From Octopus sinensis (taxonomy: Eukaryota): DNA of 64,000 bases. The translations under genes and the position numbers were made by a program. Below are positions 1-63,357 of the stretch, piece by piece. Positions within the stretch are counted from its first letter, which is position 1. Every line of letters starts with the position of its first letter. The notes below the pieces were generated by a model. The model was given only the letters and a program-made list of their open reading frames with translations. It ran no database searches and was not told the DNA's origin. Location of the stretch: the NCBI RefSeq assembly GCF_006345805.1, contig NC_042998.1, positions 69,750,001-69,814,000 on the forward strand, read 5' to 3'.

Positions 1-308
1 CGACGACGAGGGTCCCAGCTGATACGATCAACGGAACAGCTTGCTCGTGAAATTAACGTGCAAATGGCTGAGCATTCCACAGACACGTGTACCCTTAACG
101 TAGTTCTCGGGGATAATCAGCGTGACACAGAGAGTGACAAGGCTGACCCTTTGAAATACAAGTACAACTCATTTTTGCCAGCTGAGTGGACTGGAGCAAC
201 GTGAAATAAAGTGTCTTGCTCAAGGACACAACGCGTCGCCGGGAATCGAACTCACAACCTTACGATCATGAGCCGAATGCCCTAACCACTAAGCCACGCG
301 CCCTCACA
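1..308 (-). mobile_element. tRNA-derived SINE, family A (3' end runs off the window)
   Basis: Reverse complement begins GGCGCGTGGCTTAGTGG (A box) ... GAGTTCGATTCCC (B box) then TGTGTCCTTGAGCAAGACACTT; homologous to 44189-44508, 48784-49075 and 62191-62490. Confidence 0.85.
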
Positions 309-439
309 CATCGTATTACACCACACCACTCAACACTTCATGTTATACTATACTTTGTAACAGAATTATCTCATACTCCACCACACTACCTTATGCATAC
401 AATACAGCCCCACAATGTCGCTTCCGTTACGTTCAAACA

Positions 440-7980: not shown

Positions 7981-8557
7981 CTTTTCTTATCTTTTAGTTT
8001 TTACTTGTTTCAGTCATTAGTCTGCAGCCACGGTACTAATTTTTTGTTCTTAAACCTAGTACTTATTCTATCCGTTGCTTTTGCGTAAACAAACCAGTTT
8101 TCAAGCAGCGGTGGAGGATAAGCTAGTTTTCAAGCAGTGGTGGGAGACAAGCCAGTTTTCAAGCAGTTGTGGGGGACAAACCAGTTTTCAAGCTGTGGTG
8201 AGGGACAAACCAGTTTTCAAGCAGTGGTGGCAGACAAACCAGTTTTCAAGCAGTGGTGGCAGACAAACCAGTTTTCAAGCAGTGGTGGCAGACCGACCAG
8301 TTTTCAAGCAGTGGTGGGAGACAAGCGAGTTTTCAAGCAGTTGTGGGGGACAAACCATTTTTCAAGCTGTGGTGGGAAACAAGCCAGTTTTCAAGCAGTT
8401 GTGGGGGACAAACCAGTTTTCAAGCATTGGTGAGGGACAAACTAGATTTCAAGCAGTGGTGGGAGACAAACCAGTTTTCAAGCAGTGATGGGGGACAAAC
8501 CAGTTTTCAAGCATTGGTGGGGGACCAACAGAGACTGAAATACACACACACACACAC

Positions 8558-8885: not shown

Positions 8886-8959
8886 TTTACACTATGTATG
8901 TTCAAGCAAACTTCCGTTTAAATATTTTTTCAGTCTGTATCACATTCTAATTTGCTATA

Positions 8960-9162
8960 TAGGCGCAGGAGTGGCTGTGTGGTAAGTAGTTTGCTTACCA
9001 ACCACCTGGTTCCGGGTTCAGTCCCACTGCGTGGCACCTTGGGCAAGTGTCTTCTACTATAGCCTCGGGCCGAGCAAAGCCTTATGAGTGGATTTGGTAG
9101 GCAGAAACTGAAAGAAGCCCGTCGTATATATGTATATATATATATGTATGTATATATATATG

Positions 9163-9205
<43 letters not shown>

Positions 9206-9226
9206 ATGTGTGTGTATGTGTGTGTG

Positions 9227-9275
<49 letters not shown>

Positions 9276-9445
9276 TTGTGTGTCTGTTCTTGTCCCCACC
9301 AACATCGCTTGACATGCTATGCTGGTGTGCTTACGTCCCCGTAACTTAGTGGTTCGGCAAAAAGACACCGATAGAATAGGTAGTAGGCTAAGTCCTGGGG
9401 TCGATTTGCTCGCAGTCAAATGACTGAAACCAATAAAAGAAAAGA
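8960..9445 (+). mobile_element. SINE family C, full length
   Basis: A box TGGCTGTGTGGTAAG, B box GGGTTCAGTCCC, GGCACCTTGGGCAAGTGTCTT body, internal (TA)n(TG)n, A-rich tail. Confidence 0.9.
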
Positions 9446-10215: not shown

Positions 10216-10440
10216 CCTTTTACTCTTACTTGTTTCAGGCATTTGACTGCGGCCATGCTGGAACACCGCCTTTAGTCGAGTAAATCGACCCCAGGACTTC
10301 TTCTTTGTAAGTCTAGTCCTTATTCTATCGGTCTCTTTTGCCGAACAACTAAGTTACGGGGACGTAAATACACCAGCATCGGTTGTCAAGCAATGTTGGG
10401 GGGACAAACACAGACACAGAAACACACACACACACACACA
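10216..10440 (-). mobile_element. SINE family C, 3' half
   Basis: Reverse complement of the family C tail, ending at the internal microsatellite. Confidence 0.85.
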
Positions 10441-11571: not shown

Positions 11572-11962
11572 TAGGCGCAGGAGTGGCTGTGTGATAAGTA
11601 GCTTGCTTCCCAACCACATGGTTCCGGGTTCAGTCCCTGTGTGTGGCACCTAGGGCAAGTATCTTCTGCTATAGCCTCGGTCCGACCAAAGCGTTGTGAG
11701 TGGATTTGGTAGACGGAAACTGAAAGAAGCCTGTTGTATATGTGTGTGTGTGTGTGTTTGTGTCTGACTGTCCATCCAACATCGTTTGACAACCGATGCT
11801 GGTGTGTTTATGTTCCCGTAGCTCAGCGGTTCGGCAATAGAGATCAATAGAATAAGTACTAGGCTTACAAAGAATAATTCCTGGGGTCGATTTGCTCGAC
11901 TAAAGGCGGTGCTCCAGCATGGCTGCAGTCAAATGACAGAAGCAGTTAAAAGAACAAAAGAA
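11572..11962 (+). mobile_element. SINE family C, full length
   Basis: Same head, body and tail as 8960-9445. Confidence 0.9.
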
Positions 11963-14385: not shown

Positions 14386-15735
14386 CTTCGTAACACAGTA
14401 TAGGTAAAAATGCACCGGGGTCTTTAGTCATCCGTCAAGTCACAACAAGGACCTCAGACAGATAATACTTTCCTTAAGATGTGCGCTGTGCCCAATAAAG
14501 TTGCTTTTTGCAAGACATCAATCATGCATTGGATTACAAGTCGCCTTAAGAAGTCTTGCAGTTTCAGTGGGATTGAGCCCAAGCTCTCGCATTCCATACA
14601 GTCTTGCCATTTCCACTTTCTGTTTTGAGCACTTGGTGATTTTTTTCAACCTCTTTACTCACAACATTCATGTCATTTGGTATGGCTACATCAACGATCT
14701 GACAGTATTTGTCTCTCTTATTCAATATGACAATATCCGGCTGATGGTGTTCGATTACACGGTCCGTCTGAAAATCATAGTCCCATAGTATTGTTACTTT
14801 TCCATCCTCCTGCATAACTTTACTTGGTTCATGTTCACACCACTTCACTGTTACTTCATATTGGTATTTACGGCATAAGAGCCAATGAAGATACACACAA
14901 ACTTTTCCATTTCTTCATGATAAAGCTGATTAATTCTCTTTTGTTGCCTGCTACACTGAATATACTCAGACATTCACTGATACATGAGTGTGGGATCATA
15001 TCATAGAATTTCCTATAATCTATTCATGCTATTGTTAGATTTTTCTTTCTAGTTTTTACTTCAGTTGGAACTGATTTGTCTATATATAATAGATCATACG
15101 TTCCTCTAGCTTTCTTCCTGCAACCTTTCTGTTCTTCTGGCAGTAAATTCTGGTTGTCAAGATGCTCATAAATGCTTTCTGAAAGCATTCCCATTAACAA
15201 TTTCCACATTAATGGTAAGCAAGTGATTGGTCTATAGTTGCTAGCTGTATTACCCTTGCCCTTATCCTTCATAACGAATATTGTCCTCTCTCTAGTCATC
15301 CAATCTAGTATTATTCCCCCATTAAGCAACCCTGAAGATGTTCCTTTAGCCTCCTATGTAAACTACTGAATTTCTTTAGCCAGTACCCTTGGACTAAATT
15401 TGGTCCTGAGAACTTCCAATTCGGCATATTTCCTAACACGTTACTCATTAATGCACTAGTTAATCTTAGATCTGGCTGCTTCTCACTCACTACTTCTTCC
15501 CTCACTTTTAACCATACTGCATCTTCATTATGAGTGACTGGTTGATCCCAAATATTACTCCAGAACTTTCTAGCTTTCTCTGCATTAGGTTTCTTCTCTT
15601 CAGTACTTCGTTCTCCACTATTTTTTTTGCATCTTGTGTTTCCTAACTTATTTGTTTTCCAGGCTTCTATTCTACTAAGATCTTGTCTTAAAGTCTTAAC
15701 TTTATTTTGTGGTCTTCTTTTCCACATTTGCTATT
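14385..15735 (-). mobile_element. R4/Dong-like non-LTR retrotransposon fragment (partial RT plus REL endonuclease), internally deleted
   Basis: ORFs 15311-15727, 15024-15329 (ASNYRPITCLPLMWKLL...QKGCRK) and 14564-14896 (ILWDYDFQTDRVIEHHQPDIVI...IVDVAIP, PD-(D/E)xK motif); ends LLGTAHILRKVLSV* at 14454, then a short UTR and an (AAT)n tail. Confidence 0.85.
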
Positions 15736-19164: not shown

Positions 19165-19830
19165 GACCAACCTCCTCCTTCTTACCCTCCTTCTCCTTCT
19201 CCTTTCACCTACTTTACTACAACGTCCTCACACTTCTACTATCTACCTCCTACCTCCTACCACAACATGTCATACATTAGTACTGCAGTGAAAGTACACG
19301 GATTTCAGCATCAAATTCACCTAATCAGCATAATCACCAACACCATAACCATCATCATCATCGTTGTCGTCATCGTCGTCGTCAGAATTACCGTCAGCCT
19401 CACCACCATCATCACCATCGACATTACCTTTACCACCATCACCATTACCACTACCATTACTATCACTACCACCCTCCTCCTCCTCCTCCTCCTCATCATC
19501 ATCATCGCCAACATCACAGTCATCACCACCATAAGCGCCGTCATCTCAACCACACCATAGTCATTACCTACGTCACAATCATCACAACTGGAAGCGACTG
19601 TGGATGGCGCCACCACCACCACTACCACCACCACTCCCACCACTCCCACCACTATCACCACCACCACCACCACCACCACCGCCACCACCACCGCCACCAC
19701 CACCACCACCACCGCCGCTGCTACTACTACTACTACTACTACTACTGCTACTACTACTACTACTACCTTCAAACACCAATGCACCACCAATACCATCACT
19801 ATCACAATAACATCCACCGTGTGATCAACT
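19165..19830. repeat. Low-complexity (CCT/CAT/CAC/ACT)n tract
   Basis: Read directly; gives poly-T/P/V/G ORFs in several frames. Confidence 0.9.
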
Positions 19831-20035
19831 TTCTCCTCCAACCTCATATTTCAGTCTCCTCTCACTCCTACCACAAACCATCATCGTCATGGATGTTACC
19901 ACTACTTCTTTTTTTCCCTCTGTCTTTCTTGCTTTCTTTCTTTCTGTCTGCCTTTCTTTCTTCCTTAATTTCTTTCCAGAACTGTCCCCACCACCTCATT
20001 GAAATTCTTTCTCTGCCAATGTTATTTTTCTACAG

Positions 20036-20150
20036 GTGCCGGCCCGCAGATGTTCAACTGGACAGTTTAGAACAAGGAATATTAATGAAGACGTGGGCTG
20101 AGATGCCACCTCACCATTTCTCCTCCAATTTGTTTGATTAATTTATAAAA
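20036..20150 (+). other. Candidate terminal or non-coding exon
   Basis: Acceptor GTTATTTTTCTACAG after a pyrimidine tract and donor AAA|GTAAGG; all three frames stop inside. Confidence 0.2.
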
Positions 20151-20569: not shown

Positions 20570-22320
20570 AATATTACTTTGACTACAGGAATAGTCTTTG
20601 ACTAATGGTTCTTTCACTAATAGACCATAACATGGTTCTTTGATTACTGTTGCATATCGAACCATTCTTTGACTAGTGCATTATAAAATAGGATTTTTTG
20701 GCTACAGTAATATATAGCATGGTTCTTTGACTACTCTTCCATAAAACCGTTCTTTAACTACTACAGTATATAGCATGATACTTTGGTTACTGTAGTATAA
20801 AACAAAATGTTTTGACTACAATAATATACAGCATGGTTCTATGATTAATGCACACTAACACGATTCCGTGACTAATGTAGTATATGGCATTTGATTAATG
20901 TACTATGGCACGATTCTGTGACTAATGTAATACATAACAATGTTCTTTGATTAATGCACTATAACACGATTCCATGACTAATGTAATATATGGTATGATT
21001 CTTTGATTGTACTATAGCATGATTCCGTGACTTGTGTTGTGACCCCCTTCGGTCATGAATGACCATGGGATTGCACCTAGAAAGTTACCCTCCGAAACAC
21101 AAGTCTGGGCAAGGTTATTTATGGAAGACCAGTAGTCGCCCATGCATACCAGCCTCCCTTCTCCACACCACCGATGTTATCCAAGGGAAAGGCAAAGGCC
21201 GACACAGCTTGGCACCAGTGACGTCGCAGCTCATTTATTAACGTGCAAGTGGCCGAGCATTTCACAGACACGTGTACCCTTAACGTAGTTCTTGGGGAGA
21301 TTCAGCGTGACACAGAGTGTGACAAGGCTGGTCTTTTGAAATACAGGTACACCAGAAAAAAGAAGAAAGATTGAGAGGAAGTTGTGGTGAAAGAGTACAG
21401 TAGGGTTCATCACCACCCCCTGCCGGAGCATCGTGGAGCTTTAGATGTTTTTGCTCAATAAACACTCACAATACTCGGTCTGGGAATCGAAAGCACGATT
21501 CCGTGACTAATGCAATATATAACAATGTTCTTTGATTAATGCACCATAACACGATTCCATGACTAATGTAATATATAGCATGATTCTTTGATTAATGCAC
21601 TATAGCACGTTTCCATGACTAATGTAATGTATAACATATTTTTTTGATTAATGCACTATAACACAATTCCATGACTAATGTAATATATCGCATGGTTCTT
21701 TGATTAATGCACTATAGCACGTTTCCATGACTAATGTAATATATGACATGATTCTTTGATTAATGCACTATAGCACGTTTCCATGACTAATGTAATATAT
21801 AACATGGTTCTTTGATTAATGCACTATAACACGATTCCATGACTAATGTAATATATGGCATGATTCTTTGATTAATGCACTATAACACGATTCCATGACT
21901 AATGTAATATATAACATGGTTCTTTGATTAATGCACTATAACACGATTCCATGACTAATGTAATATATGGCGTGATTCTTTGATTAATGTACTATAGCAC
22001 GATTTCGTGACAAATGTAATACATAACAAGGTTCTTTGATTAATACACCATTATACGATTCCATGACTAATGTAATATATGGCGTGATTCTTTGATTAAT
22101 GCTCGCTAACACGATTCCATGACTAATACAATATATAACATTATTCTTTACTTACATAGCATGATTCTTTGACTCCAATAATTTATAGCTTGGTTCTTTG
22201 ATTAATCTACATTACCAGAATTCTTCGATTACTATAGTATATAGCACCGTTATTTGGTTATTCTAGTTTATAAAAAGGACCTTTGAGTACTGTATTATAG
22301 CTGTTCGATATTGAAATACG
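20570..22320. repeat. 56-bp minisatellite (dimer of 27-29-bp monomers) with degenerate monomeric edges
   Basis: ATGACTAATG recurs at 21783, 21839 and 21895 (period 56); homogeneous core at 21493-22140 and 20860-21032. Confidence 0.95.
21033..21491 (-). mobile_element. Chimeric SINE insertion (family D part, family A part and a further family E tail)
   Basis: 21353-21491 matches 27380-27510; 21237-21352 matches family A at 54-170; flanked by AGCA(T/C)GATTCCGTGACT at 21016-21032 and 21492-21508. Confidence 0.75.

Positions 22321-33849: not shown

Positions 33850-33853
<4 letters not shown>
33390..33853 (-). mobile_element. RTE-5'UTR-like non-autonomous element
   Basis: Reverse complement contains GGGCATCCTTCTAGGAGAAGGTAACTC, resembling RTE 5' UTR motifs as I recall them; GC-richer than the flanks. 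Confidence 0.4.
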
Positions 33854-33885
<32 letters not shown>

Positions 33886-33891
33886 TCACTT

Positions 33892-34166
33892 TGATCAGTA
33901 ATGAAATCAGCTTCTGATTTCTATGATGTTTTCTTTAAGTCGAGTTAGTGTAACCCTCGCCAACCGGGTGAAAATCCCTGATGAGGGTCAATCAAATCCG
34001 ACATCCTCGATTGGTGATCTGGTTCTGCCTCGCTCGCTGTAGGGAGCTTATCTCCCTTTTCATCATTAGATAAGTCCTTCCCGTGACTAAGAGTTGTTCT
34101 GACTTTCATTTCTAGCAATGCTGGTGCTTACTAGCATTCTCAGTCATTTTACTGACGTCTATACTG

Positions 34167-34197
<31 letters not shown>

Positions 34198-34508
34198 ATA
34201 TATATATATATATATACTGTTCTCACATTCAACCATTGCTACATACTAATACGCACAAGGTCCTACTGTTGTGTCCGCTACTAGAAGTGGACTTACAATA
34301 CCTACAACACCCCTATCCTTCGATTGCTATGTCCACTGTTCAGTACACTATATTTATGGAAAGTTCCATTTCACAGACAAACTATAAACTAATTAGATCA
34401 TGAACAATCTCCACATTGTCAGCAAATTTGTTATATAAAGCAATAATTAGGTTATCGTAGGATACTATACACACCATACATACATACAATGCAAATATAT
34501 ATATATAG

Positions 34509-34544
<36 letters not shown>

Positions 34545-34858
34545 ATATATATTATATATATATATATATCTATTATATATAATTATGATCAGTAATGAAA
34601 TCAGCTTCTGATTTTATGATGTTTTCTTTAAGTCGAGTTAGTGTAACCCTCGCCAACCGGGTGAAAATCCCTGATGAGGGTCAATCAAATCCGACATCCT
34701 CGATGGTGATCTGTTCTGCCTCGCTCGCTGTAGGGAGCTTATCTCCCTTTTCATCATTAGATAAGTCCTTCCCGTGACTAAGAGTTGTTCTGACTTTCAT
34801 TTCTAGCAATGCTGGTGCTTACTAGCATTCTCAGTCATTTTACTGACGTCTATACTGA

Positions 34859-34891
<33 letters not shown>

Positions 34892-35165
34892 CTGTTCTCA
34901 CATTCAACCATTGCTACATACTAATACGCACAAGGTCCTACTGTTGTGTACCGCTACTAGAAGTGGACTTACAATACCTACACCCTATCCTTCGATTGCT
35001 ATGTCCACTGTTCAGTACACTATATTTATGGAAAGTTCCATTTCACAGACAAACTATAAACTAATTAGATCATGAACAATCTCCACATTGTCAGCAAATT
35101 TGTTATATAAAGCAATAATTAGGTTATCGTAGGGATACTATACACACATACATAATACATGCATA
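33892..35165. repeat. Tandem duplication, period about 694 bp (33892-34495 and 34586-35165)
   Basis: The two copies differ by small indels and (AT)n length. Confidence 0.95.
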
Positions 35166-35167
35166 TA

Positions 35168-35225
<58 letters not shown>

Positions 35226-36034
35226 TATATATATGTTATTATTATTATTTTAGGCATACCACTAATATATATGTATATATAAGAAGTAGTACTGGATGTA
35301 AAGCGCTGCCTTAAGTACGCCTGAAAACACATCACATTTCTGTAGAATTCTTTATTAAGCATAATGTTTTGATTTCTATTAAGAAGAAAAGATTTAACTC
35401 AATTATTCATTCGTCTGGAAATACTAATACCCAAAAGGATAAATAATAATATTTTTTTGAGATACTGTATTAAAAGCTTTAACAAAATCGAGGTAAATTA
35501 TATTAAATCTCTTCTGTCGATGGACTTATTCCACTTGTTTAGACGTGGCAATAATTGTTGTGAAATTGATGTATGTTTAAAAAATAAAACGTTTTTCATT
35601 CGTCAAAAGACCGTTAGCGTTTGGGAATTTTATTAAAGTCCCTTTAATTATATTTTCCATAACTTTATATGAAATATATGTCAGGCTAATCGGACGATAA
35701 TTTTCTATCTCAGACGTTGATGAGTTTTCTTTTTGGAAGCCAAAACAGAAAGTAATTCGTTCGAATAAAAATTCAAAAGATGATGGGCGAAGATTATGTC
35801 AATTCAGAGGCTAATCTTTAAAGAAAAAAAAACAAAAAACAACAACAACAAAACAAAACAAAAAACAACAAAAAAGTAAAACCAAAAAACCCTGAAAGCC
35901 GAGAATATTTATTTTCTTGCCGAAAAGAACACTTATGTAAAGCTAACAACAGAACTAAAAATTTTCCCAAAAGACAATAAGATTCTGGTAGGATTTTGTT
36001 GGGCATAAATTGATTTGTTGGTGGGTTTCTACCT

Positions 36035-39494: not shown

Positions 39495-40541
39495 TTTCTA
39501 CTCTAGGCACAAGGGCCGAAGTTTTGGGGGAGGGGGCCAGTCGATTAGATCGACCCCAGTACGCAACTGGTACTTAATTTACCGACATCGAAAGGATGAA
39601 AGGCAAAGACGACCTTGGCGGAATTTGAACTCAGAACGTAAAGACAGACGAAAAAACGCTAACCATTTCGCCCACGTGCTAACGTTTCTTATTTCTTTAT
39701 TGCCCACAAGGGGCTAAATATATATTTCTTTACTACCCACAAGGGGCTAAACATAGAGGGGACAAACAAGGACAGGCAAACGGATTAAGCCGATTACATC
39801 GACCCCAGTGCGAATCTGGTACTTTATTTATCGACCCCGAAAGGATGAAGAGTAAAGTCGACCTCGGCAGAATTTGAACTCAGAACCTAACGGCCGACGC
39901 TATACCTATTTCTTTACTACCCACAAGGGGCCAAACACAGAAGAGACAAACAAGGACGGACAAACGGATTAAGTCGATTATATCGACCCCAGTGCGTAAC
40001 TGGTATTTATTTAATCGACCCCGAAAGGATGAGAGGCAAAGTCGACCTCGGTGGAATTTGAACTCAGAACCTAACGACAGACGAAATACCGCAAAGCATT
40101 TCGCCCGGCGTGCTAACGTTTCTGCCAGCTCGCCGCCTTTCAAGGGGCTAAATATAGAGGGGACAAACAAGGACAAACAAAGGGATTAAGTCGATTACAT
40201 TGACCCCAGTGCATAAATGGTACTTTAATTATCGACCCCGAAAGGATGAAAAGCAAAGTCGACCTCGGCAGAATTTGAACTCAGAACGTAACGGCAGATG
40301 CTATACCTATTTCTTTACTACCCACAAGGGGCCAAACACAGAGGAGACAAACAAGGACAGACAGACGGATTAAGTCGATTATACCGACCCCAGTGCGTAA
40401 CTGGTACTTAATTTATCGACCCCGAAAGGATGAAAGGCAAAGTCAACCTCGGCGGAATTTGAACTCAGAACGTAACGGTAGACGAAATACTGCTAAGCAT
40501 TTCGTCCGGCGTGCTAACGTTTCTGCCTTCTCGCCGCCTTT
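39495..40541 (-). mobile_element. Tandem cluster of five SINE family B units
   Basis: Units at about 39495-39687, 39722-39898, 39903-40140, 40141-40297 and 40303-40541; a ~400-bp truncated-plus-full dimer is repeated twice. Confidence 0.9.
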
Positions 40542-40939
40542 CAAAATAAGAAATATTACTGTTTTGTTGTAACTGTCACCATTGAAGTCGTTGTCATAAC
40601 CGTAGTAGTAGCAGTCGTCGTGATAATGATAGTGGTGGTGGTAGTAGAAGTAGTAGTGGTGATGGTAGTAGTAGTTGTAGTAGTATCAGTAGCAGTAGTA
40701 GTAGTAGTGTTGGTGGTAGCGGTGGTGGTGGTGGTGGTGGTGTTAGTTCTAGACTTGCAGTGTCACATAGCGAGTGTTCATCAAGAAACGTAAATATTTA
40801 GTTAACAGTTCGACATAAAAATCTGACACGGGTAGAAATTGCCACAGCGAAATTTTATGCGCGTGTGTGTGTGTGTGTGTATTTATGCATGTATACATGT
40901 CTGTCTGTCTGTCTATCTGTCTGTCTGTCTCTCTGTCTC

Positions 40940-41854: not shown

Positions 41855-43010
41855 TACGAGGGGAATTCCAGAAGTTTTGGGACTTTGTTTTTCAGGAGAG
41901 GCAGTTATAATTGTCCCAGGTTATTGTAATTTTATTACATCAATACTACACACCTAAAAAGCTGACCTGCCAACTTTTGTTATTCAAGATTGAAGGAGAC
42001 AGCTGCAACAGCACTTTGAACACCCCCTACTAAACACTGCTTTTCACAGCTGACTAGTTTGCAGGATGCAGACGAGAAGACAATTTGGAAGATCGCTATG
42101 CAATCAAGTTTTATGTTAATCTGGATAAAAATGCTACAGAAACTTATAAAATGCTCCAGACTGATTATGGATTTATTTGTATGAGCCGAGCATCAGTGTT
42201 TCACTGGCACAAGAGGTTCATTGACGGTAAAGAAGAGGTGAGAGACAATGAAAGGTGTAAGAGGTAGGGGGGCGTCAGAACATCAGAGCTGGTTGAAAAA
42301 TTTCACAATTTTCTGGATGAAGACAGTCGTGTGTCTATAAAGACAATAAGTGTACAGTTTGAAATTCATGTGGCGCGAATTATTCATGAAGATCTGAACA
42401 TGCGGAAAGCTTGGGCAAAGTTTGTCCTTAGAGTGTTCAATGACGAACAGAAGGAAAGACGAGTTGGAGACAGCAGGGAGATGGTTGAGCTCATTAACTC
42501 CATTCCAAGAGTGCTTGAGTTTCTAATGACTTGTAACGGAAGCTGGATCTACTGTTATGATCCAGAGACTAAGAGATCAAGTACCCATTGGAAGCATCCT
42601 GGTTCCTCCAAACCCAAGATAGCCAGGCAAAACAAGTCCATCGGGAAACCCATGATGATCCCTTTTTTCGACAGCAAGGGGATCGTTTACATCTACTGAG
42701 CTCCCTCTGGCTTGGCGGTCAACAATGACTACTTTGTGGAGGTTTTGAGGGAGCTCAGGAAGATATTTCATCGCAAAAGCCAAACCTCTTCCACTCGAGT
42801 AAGTGACATCTACACCAGGACAATGCACCAGTCCACAATTCCATCGTGGTAACCAACTACTTGACAGAGATGGACATCAAAATTATCCCTCACGCTCCCC
42901 TCGGTCCAGACCTTGCTTCCTGTGAATTTTGATTGTTCTTCAAGCTGAAGGAGAACCTCAGAGGCAGTCGTTTTGGAAACATCGAGAAAATGAATGCGGC
43001 TGTGATTCCA
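41855..43010 (+). mobile_element. Mariner (Tc1/mariner) element, transposase pseudogene, 3' end missing
   Basis: Starts TA+CGAGGGG; RYAIKFYV...ETYKML helix-turn-helix region, WIYCYDPETK, HQDNAPVH and PDLASCEF (from YSPDLAPCDF); at least four in-frame stops; catalytic DETW changed to NGSW. Confidence 0.92.
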
Positions 43011-43239
43011 CAGAAATGCTATTCTGCTTCATTTTGGAAGTTAAGCTGTTTCGCTTTCTATATTGATCATTAAGTATTTTATCGTTATCTCTTGCTCTGC
43101 GACATGGAAAACACAAAGTTAGAAATATGACAGGATGTAACGGTCACGAGACCAACAAAAGTTACACTTTATATCGACATTAGTATCGTTCTGATAATTA
43201 ACATTTTTCATTCAAATTTGCAGACTGATTCTCTTTTAG

Positions 43240-44188: not shown

Positions 44189-44508
44189 GACATTCCGTCG
44201 GTTACGACGACGAGTATTTCAGTTGATCCGATCAAGGGAACTACCTGCTCGTGAAATTAACGTGCGAGTGGCTGAGCACTCCACAGACACGCGTACCCTT
44301 AAAGTAGTTCGCAAGGAGATTCAGTGTGACACAATGTGACAAGGCTGGCCCCTTTGAAATACAGGTACTACTCATTTTTGCCGACTGAGTGAACTGGAGC
44401 AAGGTGAAATAAAGTGTCTTGTTCAAGGACACAACGCAGTACTGGGAATCGAACTAACAACTTTATGATTACAAGCCGAATACCCCTAACCACCTAGCCA
44501 CGCACCTT
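44189..44508 (-). mobile_element. SINE family A
   Basis: Homologous to 1-308. Confidence 0.9.
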
Positions 44509-49984: not shown

Positions 49985-50680
49985 TAGCTGATAGTTAGCA
50001 CACCGAGCAAAATTGTTAACGGTATTTCATCCGTCTTAAGGCGACGAGCTGGCAGAAATGTTAGCACGCCGGGCGAAATGCTTAGCAGTATTTCGTCTGC
50101 CGCTACGTTCTGAGTTCAAATTCTGCCGAGGTCGACTTTGCCTTTCATCCTTTCGGGGTCGATAAATAAAGTACCAGTTGCGCACTGGGGTCGATGTAAT
50201 CGACTTAATCCCTTTGTCTGTCCTTGTTTGTCCTCTCTGTGTTTAATCCCTTGTGGGTAATAAAGAAATAGGTATTTCATCCGTCTTAAGGCGACGAGCT
50301 GGCAGAAATGTTAGCACGCCGGGCGAAATGCTTAGCAGTATTTCGTCTGCCGCTACGTTCTGAGTTCAAATTCCGCCGAGGTCGACTTTGCCTTTCATCC
50401 TTTCGGGGTCGAAAAATAAAGTACCAGTTGCGCACTGGGGTCGATGTAATCGACTTAATCCCTTTGTCTGTCCTTGTTTGTCCTCTCTGTGTTTAGCCCC
50501 TTGTAGGTAGTAAAGAAATAGGTATTTCATCCGTTTTTACTTTCTGAGTTCAAATTCTGCCGCGGTCAACTTTACCTTTTATCCTTTAGGGGTTGATAAC
50601 ATTAATACCAGTCGAGTACTTGCCGTTGATGTAATCGACTTACTTCTCCAAAATAGCTGGCATTGTGCCAAAATTTGAAA
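49985..50680 (+). mobile_element. Two young SINE B copies nested in tandem inside an older SINE B
   Basis: Near-identical copies at about 50039-50270 and 50288-50520, bracketed by GGTATTTCATCCGT(C/T)TT three times. Confidence 0.9.
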
Positions 50681-51216: not shown

Positions 51217-51458
<242 letters not shown>

Positions 51459-51472
51459 CATCTATCTATCTA

Positions 51473-54400
51473 TTAGGTAGAGATAGGAATAGACGGGGAT
51501 GCAAATGCCTCAGAGACCTGCTCAGACGCTTTCAACTGTCTGACAGGTTCCGACTAGACCACCTGAATGCGCCAACGTGGACATGGAGCAACCACATCGG
51601 GTCGTCGAGATCGTATCTAGATAGGATACTGTGTAGGACAGTAGATAGAGATAGCATAGGATACCCATAATTCCACATAGTCAACTACACGGATCACAAA
51701 CTTGTGACATGTACGCTAGACTTAGGTAAGACACTTCGGCAGGGTCCCGGATATTGGAAACTAAACGCGTCTTTCCCATCGAGACAGGTTTTCAGAGACC
51801 GGATTAGCACACTAGTAAAGAGGGCTTTGACAGGAGCCATCATCAACAACAAATGGTGGTTTGCCCTCAAGAGAGCAGTAAAAGCAGAAGCGATTAGGTA
51901 CAGCAAAGCACTAGCTATAGATAGAAATAGAGTAGAGGGTGAGCTAGTTAAGAAGCTTGAAGAGGCAATTAGAAGCGGCATCGCATCCGACGTTTTGGCG
52001 GCGAGGTTGGCCCTCGACCAACACTTCAACGCCAAACACGAAGTGTGTGCTGTCAGAGCTAGGATGCGTGCTCTAAGGAACGAAGGTGTTGGAGCCGCGA
52101 GAGAGGCCCGGGTAGCAGAGGCGCAACAGGGCAACAAAGCCACCATTCGGTCTCTGGTAGATGAACAGGGGCGCGAATTGATCGAGCCAAGTAAAATGTG
52201 TGAGGCCTTTCAACAGCATTTTGCCCGACTGTTCGGGACGAGTGGCGGGCAAGAACGGAGGGTGGACTTCAGTGCCTACCTACACAGCCTACCACGACTC
52301 TCGACAAGAGAGGCAGGGCACTGCGAAGGTGCCATCACGGCGGCGGAAGTGCGATGGCAGAATGCTCGAGGGACAAATCGCCGGGTTTGCTGCCCTACGA
52401 GCTTTACAGTTGTATGCCAGACTTGTTTGGAAACGTCTTGGCAGCGGTGTACTGCAATTGGCAGCAAAACGGGAGCATTCCTGGTTTTGTGAGCCGAGGG
52501 GCCGTAACACTGCTGAAGAAAGATCTAAACAAGGGAAATGTAATAGATAACTTTAGGCCCATCACTCTGCTTAATGCAGACTTAAAAATTTTGGCCAAGG
52601 TGTTAGCCAAGAGGTTGGCGCTTGTCATCGAGAAACTGGTCGACAAGGCGCAAACGTGCTCCGTGCCGGGCCGGACCATCCATGACAACCTCCACCTGAT
52701 GCGCTACATCATAGACAGGGTAGTTAACGAACCTGGCATGGGTGGGGCGCTGATCAATTTGGTTCAATCGAAAGCTTTCGATAGGGTAGACCATCGATAC
52801 TTGGAGGCGGTCCTCAGAGCGGCTGGCCTCGGTCCCGTCTTCCGCGGCTGGATAGCCGCTTTGTACAGAGGCATCCGTTCGGTAATTCGCGTAAATGGAC
52901 ATCTATCGAGATCTTTCGACATCGCACGTTCGGTCCGTCAGAGATGCCCCCCTCTCGTCGCTTCTATACGTATTGACTCTCGAGCCACTATTGCGGAAGC
53001 TGGCAACTCTGAAGGGCATCCCGCGAGAACTGGGATGCGGGACGAGCGTGTCTGCATACGCGGACGACGTCACCGTCATGGTGTCTAGCCACGAGCACAT
53101 CGAGCAGGTCGGCGAGACACCGAAAAACTACGAAGCGGTGACAGGAGCAAAAATTAATCGGGAAAAGTCAGTGGGCTTGCGACTAGGCACTTGGAGAAGC
53201 AAGCCCATGCCGTCCACCAGCGCCTCCGTTGTGGGACGCTGGACCGACGGTCCGGTCGAGTTGCTCGGGGTCTGGTTCGGACCGGACCTCCAAATGAAGA
53301 AGAACTGGAACGAAATAACGAGTAGGGTGGTCACTCCCGCCCGGCAATGGGCCGAGAGGAAACTGTCCCTAAAAGGTCGGGCGGAGGTGGCGAACACGTA
53401 CATCGCATCCGTCATCTACTACCGCCTGACCGTCGTGCCTTGTCCAGACCCTACCATCACCAAACTAGAACGCATTCTCTTTCGCTTCTTGTGGAAAGGA
53501 TGCGTCCCGATGGTCAGGCGATCCATTTGCTGTCAACACCCGTTAAAAGGAGGACTGGGCATGCCGTGGTTGATGATGCGCAGACACGCGCTGAGACTGC
53601 GACATCTCAGGCTCTTCGTAGACGACGGTGAACAGGTGTGGTCGCCGTTTGTGAGGCACGCTTTCCCGCAGCTCGTCTCCATGACCGAACTGTAATCGTG
53701 AATCAAAATGAGGCCGAGGAAGGGCGAATGGCACCGCGAGTGTCACGTTGCTCTCAAGCAACTCTGCCGTCCTGGGTCAACATTGAGTGACTCCATCACA
53801 ACCAAAGCATTCTATAGGAGATTAGTGGAGGGAAGGTACGACGACGAGCTCGGGGCAAACTGGACGTCGACGAGGAATACCTGACCCGCCTGTTCAGGAC
53901 GACTTGCGGGCCAGGGCCCATGGACAACTTCCAGAGATCCATGGCCTGGCAGTGCTACCGAGAAGCGCTACCCGTTCGGGATAAGCTCTACAGACACGGC
54001 TCGAGAAACACGGGGCCGACCTGCCCGAGATGCGGCCAGAGCGACGAAACCGTTCTGCACGCACTCGTGCAGTGTCCAACAATTTCCGACCTGTGGGCTT
54101 ATGTCGAACAACTGCTGTCACGTGTGGGACGAGTCGGTTTATCAGCCGAGTCTATCGTCAATATTGTCACGCCTCCTTCCTTCAAACGGAAAGGAAGAGC
54201 TATTTTCATCATCCTTGTGGCTATGGCGAAAGAATGTATCTAGTGGACGCGTCTGAAAGGATTGGAGACAAACACTTTGCTCTCTGGTCAACCTCTAATC
54301 AACTTTTTCAAGTACCACTTGAAAAGGAAAGTGAGAGTAGAGAGGCAAGTTTTGTCTAGCGAACGTTTTAAAAAAAGATGGGTGAATGTAGCAAGGATGG

Positions 54401-55025: not shown

Positions 55026-55450
55026 CTCTTTACTCTTACTCTTTTACTTGTTTCAGTCATTTGACTGTGGCCATGCTGGAGCACCGCCTTTAGTCGAGCA
55101 AATCAAACCTAGGACTTATTCTTTGTAAGCCTAGTACTTATTCTATCGGGGTTTTTCGCCGAACTGCTAAGTTACGGGGAAGTAAGCACACCAGCATCGT
55201 TTGTCAAGCGACGTTGGGGGGGGGGGGGCAAACACAGACACACAAATATATACACACGCATACATATATATATACATATATATACAACGGGCTTCTTTCA
55301 GTTTCCGTCTACCAAGTCCATTCACAAGGCTTTGGTCGGGCCGAGGCTATAGTAGAAGACATTTGCCCAAGGTGCCACGCAGTGGGAATGAACCCAGAAC
55401 CATGTGGTTCGTAAGCAAGCTACTTACCACACAGCCATTCATGCGCCTAT
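55026..55450 (-). mobile_element. SINE family C, full length
   Basis: Reverse complement of 8960-9445. Confidence 0.9.
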
Positions 55451-59826: not shown

Positions 59827-60195
59827 TAAATGAAATAAAACATATGCATATATATAAACATATATGTACGTACCTACCTCTATATGTACATATACACGCA
59901 TATAATATACACACACACATGTATATACACTTATACACACACACACACAGACATGTGCAGTGAGGGATTTTTCAGGGTACTCCATTTTGGGGAGGAAGGA
60001 ATAGGCATAGTGATTAACAGGAGACGCATACAATAGTTGATGAGATAATGTGGATAAATGGGTGAATTGGTAATACTCGAGAAAAGTGTCCGAGACTACC
60101 CTGCTCCAAGTAGAGGCAATTATAGTAATGGAAGAAAAAAAGTAGTGATTCATCGATGGTCGTTCTTATTGTCTTTATTTGTTTTTCACTTGTAG

Positions 60196-60297
60196 GATCT
60201 GGAAGAAGGGATATTACCTATGAGTTTTGGAAACCCTTCTATACCGGTGGGATCAACGTTGTTAACGCTCTACTTGAATCTTTGTAAATTAATACCC
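60196..60297 (+). other. Candidate exon directly upstream of the long inverted repeat
   Basis: Strong acceptor CTTATTGTCTTTATTTGTTTTTCACTTGTAG; reads either 102 nt open to CCC|GTAAGA (DLEEGILPMSFGNPSIPVGSTLLTLYLNLCKLIP) or SGRRDITYEFWKPFYTGGINVVNALLESL*. Confidence 0.35.
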
Positions 60298-60354
60298 GTA
60301 AGAAAGACATGAACTGCGAAGGAATTTCCGAGGGCCAATGATTCGTAAAGGAAA

Positions 60355-60663
60355 GACTAGGCAGAGTGATATGTTCGGAGCCTGAGGAATTGGACTTAAC
60401 ATAGGTGAGAAGAAAATGAGAAACGATTGGGACAAGAATGTTTGAGAAAGTGTAGTATGCTCTCAGCAAGATTCGAGGAGAGGCCATCATAGGCGCGCTG
60501 TCTTCTTCTGCATTTTCTACCGGAACTATGATGGCCTCTCCTCGAATCTTGCTGAGAGCATACTACACTTTCTCAAGTATTCTTGTCCCAATCGTTTCTC
60601 ATTTTCTTCTCACCTATGTTATGTCCAATTCCTCAGGCTCCGAACATATCACTCTGCCTAGTC
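60355..60663. repeat. Long inverted repeat: 138-bp arms, 33-nt loop
   Basis: 60355-60492 versus 60526-60663, 135 of 138 positions Watson-Crick complementary. Confidence 0.95.
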
Positions 60664-61409
60664 CTGGATGTCTGCATGTGCCGTAGATTCCCCATCATCG
60701 CAGATCTGAGAGTAATAGTGTGCCTAGTTGTGTTGCAGTAGCAGTTGAATTACGACTATGGTAACGGTACTCCCTTGTAGCTTTGTTGAGGATTAATAGT
60801 TGTTAGAAGCTAAAGTATTTTCTGTCCCTGAAGAGCAAGGCCAGTCTTTGTGAGTTCATACTTTTGCTGACAGACTTCTACTTGCTCGTTGTTCATGTTT
60901 AGAAGTGTTCTTTAGTTCCAGTTCAGTATTATAGTGGTGATGGTAATTGTATTGATGATGGTCTTGGTGGTTGCGTAGGTGATGGTGGTGGTGACATTGT
61001 TGGTGTGATTGCGTTGGTGGTGATGGTGACGATTGTGGTAGTGGTGGAAGATGCAGTGGGTGTAGAGATAATTAAAGTGATGATGATGATTGTGATAGTG
61101 GTGGGTGTGGTGATGCTGGTGAGGGTTGTTGTTATGGGAATGTTGTGGCGGTGGCGATGGTAGTAGCGATGATCATGCTGGTGATTGGGTGTGGTGGAGG
61201 TAGTGATGGAAATAACGTTTGGTGGTGGTAACTGGTGGCGATGGTGGTGGTGGTAGGGGAGGAATTAGAGAAATTGATGTGAGTTGGGGCGATGATGATG
61301 ATGATGATGATATTACCACCACCACCACCACCATCAACAACAACAACTGTGTTAATAGACGGTTATAATTACGTAATTGCAAAAATTGCTGGTGGCTTGG
61401 AGTAAAAAG

Positions 61410-62040
61410 AGTGATGAAGGTGTGGTGTGGCGGAGGATCAGTGTGGTGGAGAATTGGTGCGGTGGAGGACTGACAAGGTGGAAATTTGGTGGGGGTGTAG
61501 GAATGCTTTGGTGGAAAATTAGTTGGTGGGGACGGAGAACTGGTGTGTTAGAGGTGTCATATCATGGTGAATTGACGAGGTGGAGTTATGGTGAGATGGG
61601 GGAGGCGTTGGTGTAGTGGGGACTGGTGTGAGTGAAGATTGGAGTCGTGGAGGCCTAGTGTGGTGAAAAATCGGTGTGTTGGAGGTCTGGCGTGGTGTTG
61701 TGGTGTAGGGTTTGTGTAGTGGAGAATTCGTGAAGTAGTGAAGAATTGAGGGAGATGGAGGAATGGTTTTGCGGAGGATTGGTGTGATGAGGTTTGATAT
61801 AATGGAGGTTTGGAATTGTGGAGGAATGCCCTTATATGGAGGACTAGTGAAGTAATGAAGCTTGGTTGTGATGGAAGACAGATGTGATGGAAAACTTAAC
61901 GGGATGATTGGTGCAGTGCACGACGTGTGTGGACGACTGGTGGTTTGGTGGCGGTTTGGTGTGGTGCAGAATTAGTATTGTAGAAGATTGGTGCTGTATA
62001 AGATTGGTAGCTTAGGGTAGTCATGTAATGACGGTGTATT
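61410..62040. repeat. Degenerate ~16-bp G-rich tandem repeat
   Basis: Units about GGAGGATTGGTGTGGT. Confidence 0.6.
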
Positions 62041-62125
62041 TCATTAGAGGATTGGTGTCGTGTGTATGTGTGCGTGCGTGTGAATGTGTGTGAATATGTG
62101 TGTGTGTGAGTGTGTATATGTGTGC

Positions 62126-62190
<65 letters not shown>

Positions 62191-62191
<1 letters not shown>

Positions 62192-62490
62192 GAATGCACG
62201 TGGCCTAGTGGTTACGGTATTCGGCTCACGATCGTAAGATCATGAGTTTGATTCCTGGCGTCGCGTTGTGTCCTTGAGCAAGACACTTTATTTCACCTTG
62301 CTCCAATTCACTCAGCTGGCAAAAATGAGTAGTACCTGTATTTCAAAGGGGCCAGCCTTGTCACATTCTTTGTCACAACTGAACCTTCCCGAAAAGATAC
62401 GCGTGTCTGTGGGGTACTCAGCTGTTTGCACGTTAATTTCACGAGCAGGCTGTTCCGTTGATTGGATCATCTGGAGCCCTCGTCTTCGTC
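62191..62490 (+). mobile_element. SINE family A
   Basis: A box TGGCCTAGTGG, B box GAGTTTGATTCC, GTCCTTGAGCAAGACACTT body. Confidence 0.9.
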
Positions 62491-63357
62491 ACCAACTGAG
62501 TGCTACTTTGTTTCGTTTTTGTTTGCATGTGACTCTGAATCCGTGAAGATATAGTAGCAGTGGACTTCTGTAGTGGAGGTATGATGTTTGAGATGGTCTA
62601 TAGTGGGGGAGGTGTAGTGAGGTGGTGGATTAGTGTGAAATTATAATGTCAACGATTGATTGTTGGGGTTATGCTGATGTGGAACAGCACTGATATAGTG
62701 GAAGATTGGTGCACCGGAAATGCTGTTGTTTACCCCAAACCAGTCTTAATTAAAGATATACCATTCAAGACCATCCTATGTATTTTCAAACATAGTATAT
62801 CTTATATTACATCATTCTATATGTTCTTCATTTTAAAAATAGTAGGTTGGTTTTAGGTAGATCCAATTGTTAATTTGACAGCGATGCACCATGACCGTCT
62901 GTCAACGAAGCTATATTCTTGTCATTGGCGATCCGACTCCCGATATATGTCTGGTTTAATTCCGTTTTATCATGATTAAGGTCTTTTAAAATAGAATTAC
63001 TGATTTGTGTAAAAAAAGGCTTTCCGTTTATTAAAAACAAAAATTGTATTGTCACGGCTTCCGTTTATTCGTATGTACACACACACACATACACACACAC
63101 ACGCACACACACACACATACACACACACACACACACATACACACACACGCACACACACACACATACACACACACACGCACACACACACACACATAGACAC
63201 ACACACACACACCGGCACGCGCACTTACAAACGCACACACATATGGCAGTCTACCTCGTCATATGCAGTAGAAGAAATTATGGCAGAACTCGAGCGTTTT
63301 GTGTGTGTCTATACAACATGATGTGTGTGTGTGTGTGGTGTGTGTGTGTGTGTGTAT

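What the first reader, a model, noticed from the sequence alone, without database searches (positions are those of the whole stretch)
60355..60663. 138-bp near-perfect inverted repeat of otherwise unique-looking sequence
Seen: arms 60355-60492 and 60526-60663 with a 33-nt loop. Only three positions differ; two are adjacent G:U/U:G pairs on the plus strand and one is U:U. It matches none of the repeat families in this window, has no obvious TSD, and the left arm's flank continues without a break in composition, suggesting a local inverted duplication. Established: such foldbacks give long dsRNA, the substrate of Dicer (hairpin-RNA siRNAs) and ADAR. Inference: a young hairpin-RNA or editing module, or a fold-back repair product.
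Basis: partly seen in the sequence, partly recalled or inferred. Interest (0 to 1): 0.75.

Follow-up and report, generated by a model that had tools for sequence, protein, structure and literature searches.

The report
Lone 309-bp palindrome in repeat-rich DNA
A real, almost perfect 309-base palindrome lies in non-coding, repeat-rich animal DNA; it is most likely a recent local copying accident, or a lone small transposon, and nothing shows it does a job.

Summary
The arms are 60355-60492 and 60526-60663, 138 nt each, with 135 of 138 positions complementary around a 33-nt loop. The three mismatches are as described. The structure is far beyond chance on both strands (fold z about -32).

It is the only copy in the 64-kb window and belongs to none of the window's repeat families. 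Its ends are sharp, and the flanks share no direct or inverted similarity. The only possible target-site duplication is a palindromic TA or CTAG hidden in the terminal GACTAG.

It matches no Rfam family at threshold, no Pfam family and no predicted protein in two very large libraries. Exact 22-mers of the arm are absent from the metagenome, prokaryote-genome and viral collections. Plasmid and phage records give no match.

The window is invertebrate, probably cephalopod, intergenic or intronic DNA, about 20% tandem repeats plus SINE, LINE and mariner debris.

- Best reading (0.5): a young, probably neutral local inverted duplication made by template switching or fold-back repair.
- Main rival (0.3): a single miniature foldback or MITE-type transposon.

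A selected hairpin-RNA or RNA-editing role is untested and has no support here. A published survey also found no dedicated siRNA pathway in molluscs. Interest is low to moderate.

The parts
60355..60492 (.). Left arm of the inverted repeat (138 nt; purine-rich on the + strand, GC skew +0.43)
60493..60525 (.). 33-nt unpaired spacer or loop, GCGCGCTGTCTTCTTCTGCATTTTCTACCGGAA. It has no internal palindrome and no similarity to either flank or to sequencing adapters recalled from memory.
60526..60663 (.). Right arm (138 nt), the reverse complement of the left arm at 135 of 138 positions; pyrimidine-rich on the + strand, GC skew -0.40
60440..60441 (.). Dinucleotide GT that pairs with GT at 60577-60578. 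The same dinucleotide sits on the + strand in both arms, so it reads as two transitions or as a 2-bp inversion relative to a perfect palindrome. It gives G:U and U:G on + RNA.
60396..60396 (.). T opposite T at 60622, the only transversion-type difference (U:U bulge in both fold predictions)
60357..60360 (.). CTAG, mirrored at 60658-60661. This is the only candidate (palindromic) target-site duplication. The hypothetical empty site would read ...AAAGGAAAGACTAGTCCTGGATG..., with the 8-bp palindrome GACTAGTC.
   Evidence: reading of the sequence; inference

Best explanation
This is a young, probably neutral structural mutation: a local inverted duplication of about 138 bp of unique non-coding sequence.

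Proposed origin (inferred). During replication or break repair, the growing strand switched template. It either folded back on itself or jumped to the opposite strand. It then copied 138 nt backwards and returned to the original template. This leaves an arm, a 33-nt spacer and a reverse-complement arm, all created in one event. Two or three point changes accumulated afterwards.

Consequences that follow from established knowledge:
- As DNA, the element can extrude a cruciform. Long palindromes with short spacers are known to be fragile, which fits a young age.
- As RNA, if it lies in any transcript of either strand, it would fold into a 138-bp near-perfect duplex. Such a duplex is a generic substrate for ADAR hyper-editing.

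What is shown is the structure, its uniqueness in the data at hand, and the absence of coding or known RNA-family signal. The mode of origin, the age and the neutrality are inferred.
For: - The repeat is real and sharply bounded.
- There is only one copy in 64 kb, and it is unrelated to the window's SINE, LINE, mariner and satellite families.
- There is no ordinary TSD and no residual similarity of the flanks, direct or inverted.
- The spacer is short (33 nt) and the arms differ by 2.2%, which indicates recent origin.
- The left arm's GC skew (+0.43) and purine content (0.66) sit at the mean of the surrounding 4 kb (0.43 and 0.63). The right arm is an outlier: at most 2.6% of windows have a GC skew as low, and none is as purine-poor.
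- Exact 22-mers of the arm are absent from the metagenome, prokaryote-genome and viral collections. Plasmid and phage records give no match.
- The longest arm-spanning reading frame has no relative among 5.8 billion or 1.84 billion proteins. No arm frame has a Pfam hit at threshold.
Against: - The host genome itself could not be searched, so 'single copy' is established only for this window and for collections that hold little or no DNA of this organism.
- No outgroup or second haplotype was available to show an ancestral state with one arm.
- The compositional polarity is ambiguous. The loop (purine 0.33) and the first 40 nt of the right flank (0.42) resemble the right arm, while the left flank (0.65) resembles the left arm.
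- No microhomology is visible at the junctions.
- Documented template-switch events are mostly shorter than 138 nt (my recollection of the cited papers; not checked for a length distribution).
Confidence: 0.5

Rival explanations
1. It is a single copy of a miniature foldback or MITE-type DNA transposon. The element would consist almost entirely of two 136-138-bp terminal inverted repeats, inserted at a palindromic target (GACTAGTC), with a TA or CTAG duplication that cannot be told apart from the repeat itself.
For: - The size (309 bp), the lack of coding capacity, the sharp ends and the near-identical arms are typical of young MITEs.
- The terminal GAC-TA-GTC / GA-CTAG-TC permits a hidden palindromic TSD.
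- The window holds mariner-type debris, and that superfamily targets TA.
- A family would need more than about 40,000 copies in a genome of a few Gb before a second copy would be expected in 64 kb. Absence from the window is therefore uninformative.
Against: - There is no non-palindromic TSD.
- Under a TA or CTAG duplication, 3 or 2 extra complementary bases outside it must be coincidence (1/64 or 1/16) or a target preference.
- The termini do not resemble the Tc1/mariner (TA-CAGT...), hAT (YARNG with an 8-bp TSD), piggyBac or PIF ends that I recall from memory.
- There is no second copy in the window or in about 87 kb of related-RT loci fetched.
- There is no hit in any collection scanned.
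Confidence: 0.3
2. It is a functional, selected hairpin-RNA locus. It would be transcribed into a 138-bp dsRNA that serves as a source of small RNAs, or as an ADAR substrate or decoy.
For: - The predicted duplex is extremely stable on either strand.
- Two of the three mismatches are wobble pairs on the + strand.
- Long perfect dsRNA is the established substrate of ADAR and Dicer (general knowledge).
- Coleoid cephalopods edit RNA massively (PMC5625713, abstract only; the rest from my own knowledge).
Against: - No Rfam family reaches threshold. The best hit is a generic long-hairpin match to plant MIR2118, at 44 bits against a gathering score of 85.
- The stem is about four times longer than a pri-miRNA stem.
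- No trans target was found in the window or the protein libraries.
- No evidence on promoter, transcript or conservation could be obtained.
- The wobble pattern is expected by chance about half the time.
- Molluscs appear to lack siRNA-class Dicer and Argonaute proteins and endo-siRNAs (PMC12479628).
Confidence: 0.07
3. It is an assembly or library artefact, that is, a fold-back chimera fixed into the consensus.
For: Fold-back chimeric molecules are a known by-product of some library preparations (general knowledge). The three differences could be consensus errors.
Against: - The arms are only 138 nt, and unique, mutually unrelated sequence continues on both sides. Read-level fold-backs mirror everything up to the read end.
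- The spacer shows no similarity to SMRTbell, ONT, TruSeq or Nextera adapter sequences, as I recalled them from memory.
Confidence: 0.06
4. It is captured foreign hairpin DNA, for example the terminal hairpin of a parvovirus or densovirus-like linear genome integrated as an endogenous viral fragment.
For: Arm and loop sizes are in the range of viral terminal hairpins (general knowledge).
Against: - No viral gene lies nearby, and the neighbouring reading frames have no Pfam hit.
- The loop lacks the small internal palindromes of T- or Y-shaped termini.
- There is no match in viral contigs or phage records.
Confidence: 0.02

Closest known systems
Template-switch mutations that create perfect hairpins in one step (Loytynoja & Goldman 2017, PMC5453318; Monttinen & Loytynoja, PMC8794818; Monttinen et al. 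2023, PMC10710096)
   Same: It is a reverse-complement copy of adjacent unique sequence with a short spacer and near-perfect pairing. No TSD is present, the locus is single, and a few point changes occurred afterwards.
   Different: The 138-nt arm is long for this class as I recall it. No ancestral sequence is available to place the switch points, and no microhomology is visible.
MITEs and foldback elements with long terminal inverted repeats
   Same: The element is about 300 bp, non-coding, almost entirely inverted repeat, and has sharp ends.
   Different: There is no demonstrable TSD, no second copy in any data reachable, and no recognisable superfamily terminus.
Drosophila hairpin-RNA (hpRNA) genes and plant proto-MIRNA inverted duplications
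   Same: Each is a long, near-perfect inverted repeat of young age that would give a long dsRNA.
   Different: Those loci are inverted duplications of a target gene and yield mapped 21-22-nt siRNAs. Here no target was found and expression is unknown. The likely host clade is reported to lack the siRNA branch (PMC12479628).
Inverted repeat pairs that form ADAR-edited dsRNA (e.g. inverted Alu pairs; PMC5625713)
   Same: It is an intramolecular duplex of more than 100 bp in non-coding DNA and would be a generic hyper-editing substrate if transcribed.
   Different: Those duplexes arise from two copies of a dispersed repeat family. This one is made of unique sequence with a 33-nt spacer.

Membership tests
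Local inverted duplication / template-switch product | Second arm is the reverse complement of immediately adjacent sequence, with a short spacer | tested here: met
   138-nt arms, 135 of 138 complementary, 33-nt spacer
Local inverted duplication / template-switch product | Sequence is unique (not a dispersed family) | tested here: inconclusive
   Unique in the 64-kb window, in about 87 kb of fetched loci and in the collections scanned. The host genome itself could not be searched.
Local inverted duplication / template-switch product | Ancestral or allelic state has one arm only | not testable with these tools
   No orthologous or allelic sequence was retrievable. The composition-based polarity is ambiguous.
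MITE / TIR DNA transposon | Terminal inverted repeats | tested here: met
   Met trivially, since the whole element is an inverted repeat
MITE / TIR DNA transposon | Target-site duplication flanking the TIRs | tested here: inconclusive
   There is no direct repeat outside the arms. Only a palindromic TA or CTAG inside GACTAG/CTAGTC could serve as one.
MITE / TIR DNA transposon | Multiple dispersed copies | tested here: inconclusive
   No second copy in the window or in the other data held. The test has very low power without the genome.
microRNA precursor | Match to a described family, or a stem of about 33 bp with an imperfect duplex | tested here: not met
   No Rfam hit at gathering score. 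The best sub-threshold hit is MIR2118 at 44 bits against 85. The stem is 138 bp and nearly perfect.
hpRNA / endo-siRNA hairpin gene | Long intramolecular dsRNA-forming inverted repeat | tested here: met
hpRNA / endo-siRNA hairpin gene | Arm derived from, or complementary to, a trans target gene | tested here: inconclusive
   No similar sequence in the window. The longest arm frame has no protein relative. The other frames were tested only against Pfam. No transcriptome was available.
hpRNA / endo-siRNA hairpin gene | Transcribed and diced into 21-22-nt small RNAs | not testable with these tools
   No expression data were available. The literature reports no dedicated siRNA pathway in molluscs (PMC12479628), and the host assignment to molluscs is itself only probable.
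Assembly fold-back chimera | Mirror symmetry continues to the end of the read or contig; the junction carries adapter sequence | tested here: not met
   Symmetry ends after 138 nt on both sides with unrelated flanks. The spacer is unlike the adapters I recalled from memory.
Viral terminal hairpin (parvovirus-like EVE) | Adjacent viral replication or capsid genes; T- or Y-shaped inner palindromes | tested here: not met
   No Pfam hits in the neighbouring frames. The loop is unstructured. No viral or phage match.

The most novel reading that the evidence does not exclude
A newly born, lineage-specific hairpin-RNA locus in a (probable) cephalopod. It would be a 138-bp perfect dsRNA made in one mutational step from unique sequence and already transcribed. 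It would act either as a dedicated ADAR substrate or decoy, or as a source of Dicer products in a clade reported to lack endo-siRNAs.
Probability: 0.05. Interest if true: 0.65.

Novelty: new member of a known kind. Interest (0 to 1): 0.25.

Why it matters
If it is only a neutral inverted duplication or a lone MITE, it matters little beyond being a clean, datable example of how a perfect long hairpin can appear in one step.

It would matter more if it were transcribed. Perfect duplexes of this length are rare outside repeat pairs. One would make a natural test substrate for how a heavily editing animal handles long self dsRNA: by ADAR hyper-editing, by innate dsRNA sensing, or by dicing. It could also be raw material for a new small-RNA gene.

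None of that can be judged from this window alone.

Tried and rejected
1. Looked for other copies. A word-7 blastn of the region against the window found nothing. The fetched related loci gave only 13-nt chance matches.

2. Scanned public collections for exact 22-mers of the arm. The two metagenome scans, the prokaryote-genome scan and the viral scan all returned 0. Plasmid and phage blastn returned no match. These collections hold very little DNA of this kind of organism, so the negatives are weak.

3. Tested whether an arm is a piece of a gene or of a TE protein. The 107-aa frame spanning left flank, left arm and loop has no hit among 5.8 billion proteins or 1.84 billion representatives. Pfam gave nothing on any arm frame, apart from a meaningless Kp4 hit at E 0.05. 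The open frames arise because one strand is pyrimidine-rich.

4. Ran Rfam at gathering score and at E up to 10. Only generic hairpin and microsatellite pseudo-miRNA hits appeared.

5. Looked for a TSD, microhomology or an older, larger degenerate palindrome. Nothing rose above shuffles. The 7-8-nt direct words shared by arm or loop and flank are at the chance level: 11 seen, about 8 expected.

6. Tried to polarise which arm is original from composition. The result is ambiguous.

7. Tried to identify the organism.
- The only named relative of the window's LINE reverse transcriptase is a cuttlefish protein at 51%.
- The closest DNA is about 75% identical, from an unannotated assembly (GCA_024449705.1) and metagenome contigs that I could not name.
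- Literature searches for those accessions and for SINE sequence strings found nothing.
- The third protein search, on an RT-like frame at 15.3-15.7 kb, found no candidates.
- The SINE at 62188-62488 matches my recollection of an abundant octopus SINE. That is memory, not a test.

8. Attempted a six-frame Pfam scan of 54-64 kb by DNA reference.

9. Counted AATAAA sites. This was uninformative.

Full report
**1. The observation**

The repeat finder reports arms 60355-60492 and 60526-60663, 138 nt each, 98% complementary, 33 nt apart.

A base-by-base comparison gives exactly three non-complementary positions:
- 60396 T opposite 60622 T.
- 60440 G opposite 60578 T.
- 60441 T opposite 60577 G.

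On a plus-strand RNA these read as U:U, G:U and U:G. On a minus-strand RNA the last two become C.A and A.C.

The adjacent pair can be put another way: both arms carry GT on the plus strand at mirrored positions. That is two transitions, or a 2-bp inversion relative to a perfect palindrome. Three ancestral states explain it equally well in two steps (AC/GT, AT/AT or GC/GC). Given two transitions, both landing as wobbles on one strand is expected about half the time. So this detail says nothing about selection.

The complementarity ends abruptly at both outer ends (7 of 29 matches beyond, the random level). The 33-nt spacer has no internal pairing.

Predicted folding is extreme on either strand. 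No shuffle came close in any of the three runs:

| Strand folded | Energy (kcal/mol) | z-score |
|---|---|---|
| Plus-strand RNA | -267 | -32 |
| Minus-strand RNA | -264 | -32 |
| Single DNA strand | -168 | -34 |

The feature is real and far beyond chance.

**2. The setting**

The window is eukaryotic, about 37% G+C, with 20% of its bases in tandem repeats. It also contains:
- Several SINE-like families at 80-90% identity.
- A frameshifted non-LTR retrotransposon at 51.3-54.4 kb, with Pfam RVT_1 and zf-RVT.
- A mariner-like fragment.

No tRNA gene was found and no Rfam family reached threshold. I found no host exon.

The only named relative of the reverse transcriptase is a protein of the cuttlefish Acanthosepion pharaonis, at 51% identity. 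The SINE at 62188-62488 matches my recollection of an abundant octopus SINE, which is memory only. I therefore treat the host as probably a cephalopod or other mollusc, not as established.

The palindrome lies in about 970 bp of unique sequence. A TG/TA/CA microsatellite block ends near 59950 on one side, and a G/T-rich degenerate minisatellite starts near 60930 on the other.

**3. Is it a member of a repeat family?**

A word-7 blastn of 60155-60863 against the window finds only itself and its own inverted match. All other long inverted repeats in the window are SINE pairs or (GT)n against (AC)n.

Exact 22-mers of the arm are absent from every collection scanned:
- JGI metagenome collection, two different 22-mers.
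- One-genome-per-species prokaryote collection.
- IMG/VR viral contigs.

Blastn against plasmid and phage records gives nothing. About 87 kb of DNA fetched around relatives of the window's reverse transcriptase holds no similar sequence.

These negatives are weak. None of these sources contains the host genome. A transposon family would need tens of thousands of copies before a second copy would be expected within 64 kb.

**4. Does an arm derive from a gene?**

The pyrimidine-rich strand of the arm is open in all three frames for about 45 codons. One frame runs 107 codons through the left flank, left arm and loop.

- That frame has no relative among 5.8 billion clustered proteins.
- It has none among 1.84 billion representatives searched by HMMER without a word index.
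- No arm frame has a Pfam match at threshold.

I read these frames as a by-product of strand composition, not as coding sequence.

**5. Ends and junctions**

There is no direct repeat flanking the arms. Neither direct nor inverted alignment of 60-200 nt of the two flanks exceeds shuffled controls. So there is no ordinary target-site duplication, and no older, larger palindrome that has decayed outward.

Short words shared between spacer, arms and flanks number 11, against about 8 expected.

One caveat remains. The arms begin GACTAG and end CTAGTC. A TA or CTAG duplication, being its own reverse complement, would be invisible. The implied empty site, ...GGAAAGACTAGTCCTGG..., would contain the 8-bp palindrome GACTAGTC. 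Such a site is not implausible as a target for a dimeric transposase. The extra 3 or 2 complementary bases outside the putative duplication would otherwise be a 1/64 or 1/16 coincidence.

**6. Which arm is older?**

In 138-nt windows across 58-62 kb, GC skew averages +0.43 and purine content 0.63.
- The left arm (+0.43, 0.66) sits at that mean.
- The right arm (-0.40, 0.33) is an outlier.

This favours the left arm as native. But the regional bias is driven largely by simple repeats. The spacer (purine 0.33) and the first 40 nt of the right flank (0.42) resemble the right arm, while the last 40 nt of the left flank (0.65) resemble the left arm. I regard the polarity as unresolved.

**7. Artefact?**

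Fold-back chimeric reads mirror everything up to the read end and carry adapter at the turn. Here the symmetry stops after 138 nt on both sides and unrelated unique sequence continues. The spacer is no more similar to the SMRTbell, ONT, TruSeq or Nextera sequences I recalled from memory than shuffles are. An artefact is unlikely but cannot be excluded without reads.

**8. Best explanation**

Confidence is 0.5 for a young local inverted duplication made in one step by template switching or fold-back synthesis, followed by two or three point changes.

Template switching is documented to create perfect hairpins at once, even where no similarity existed before (PMC10710096, PMC5453318, PMC8794818). 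Long palindromes with short spacers are known to be fragile (PMC3855049), which fits a recent origin.

The mechanism of action I commit to is passive:
- As DNA, the locus can extrude a cruciform.
- As part of any transcript, it would form a 138-bp duplex that ADAR would edit promiscuously (established biochemistry; not shown here).

**9. Rivals**

- **Lone MITE or foldback-type transposon (0.3).** This is the serious rival. It differs only in predictions that need the whole genome.
- **Selected hairpin-RNA or editing module (0.07).** There is no positive evidence. It matches no Rfam family at threshold (best is a generic 44-bit hit to plant MIR2118 against a gathering score of 85). The stem is far longer than any pri-miRNA stem, and no trans target was found. 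A survey of 32 molluscs, including Octopus bimaculoides, found no siRNA-class Dicer or Argonaute and no endo-siRNAs (PMC12479628). ADAR action needs only transcription, which I could not assess.
- **Assembly artefact (0.06).**
- **Captured viral terminal hairpin (0.02).**

**10. Verdict**

The functional half is unsupported.

The feature is a new instance of a known kind of structural variant. Its interest is low to moderate (0.25) until a genome-wide copy count, a sister-species comparison and expression data are in hand.

Noticed in passing
window 51300-54400 (+): Degenerate non-LTR retrotransposon forming a 56% G+C island. RVT_1 is split over two overlapping frames (52204-53085 and 52895-53692), with zf-RVT at 53818-54240. 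The nearest named relative is a cuttlefish (Acanthosepion pharaonis) protein at 51%. The closest DNA, about 75% identical, lies in unnamed assemblies and metagenome contigs.
   Followed up: partly
window 1-309, 44205-44506, 62188-62488: Three copies (82-84% identical) of a tRNA-derived-looking SINE (GGCCTAGTGGTTA...GAGTTTGATTCC head). I recall this consensus as an abundant octopus SINE, which is a lead to the host's identity and not a test.
   Followed up: partly
window 39539-40544, 50021-50642, 1333-1563: A second repeat family that occurs partly as tandem arrays: period 184/401 at 39.7-40.5 kb, and period 250 at 97% identity at 50.0-50.5 kb, in opposite orientation.
   Followed up: no
window 8900-9400, 10218-10440, 11572-11957, 55040-55449: A third interspersed family. 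Two of its copies form the window's longest inverted repeat (223 nt, 83%, 1.3 kb apart).
   Followed up: no
window 60930-62050 (+) and 19281-20138 (+): A degenerate G/T-rich minisatellite (GGTGGTGATGG-like, partly 16-nt periodic) begins 270 bp to the right of the palindrome. A block of mirror composition (CAC/CAT-rich) lies at 19.3-20.1 kb.
   Followed up: no
window 62055-62192 and 63077-63212: (GT)n and (AC)n microsatellites flank a SINE and form a 138-nt, 83% inverted repeat by simple-repeat complementarity. The arm length equals that of the finding only by coincidence.
   Followed up: yes
window 33853-35245: A tandem duplication of about 700 bp (33853-34576 against 34545-35245), 94% identical.
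   Followed up: no
window 8089-8529 and 21494-22149: A 29-bp minisatellite with 15 copies, and a 56/112-bp satellite with about 12 copies and a diverged array at 20.6-21.0 kb.
   Followed up: no
window 14567-15730 (-): Reading frames that look like a reverse-transcriptase-bearing element by eye (e.g. NYRPITCLPLMWKLL). They have no Pfam hit, and for the 15314-15730 frame no word-sharing homologue in the 5.8-billion-protein index.
   Followed up: partly
window 42268-43028: A mariner-like transposase fragment. Pfam Transposase_1 scores E 0.0019, below the curated cutoff.
   Followed up: no
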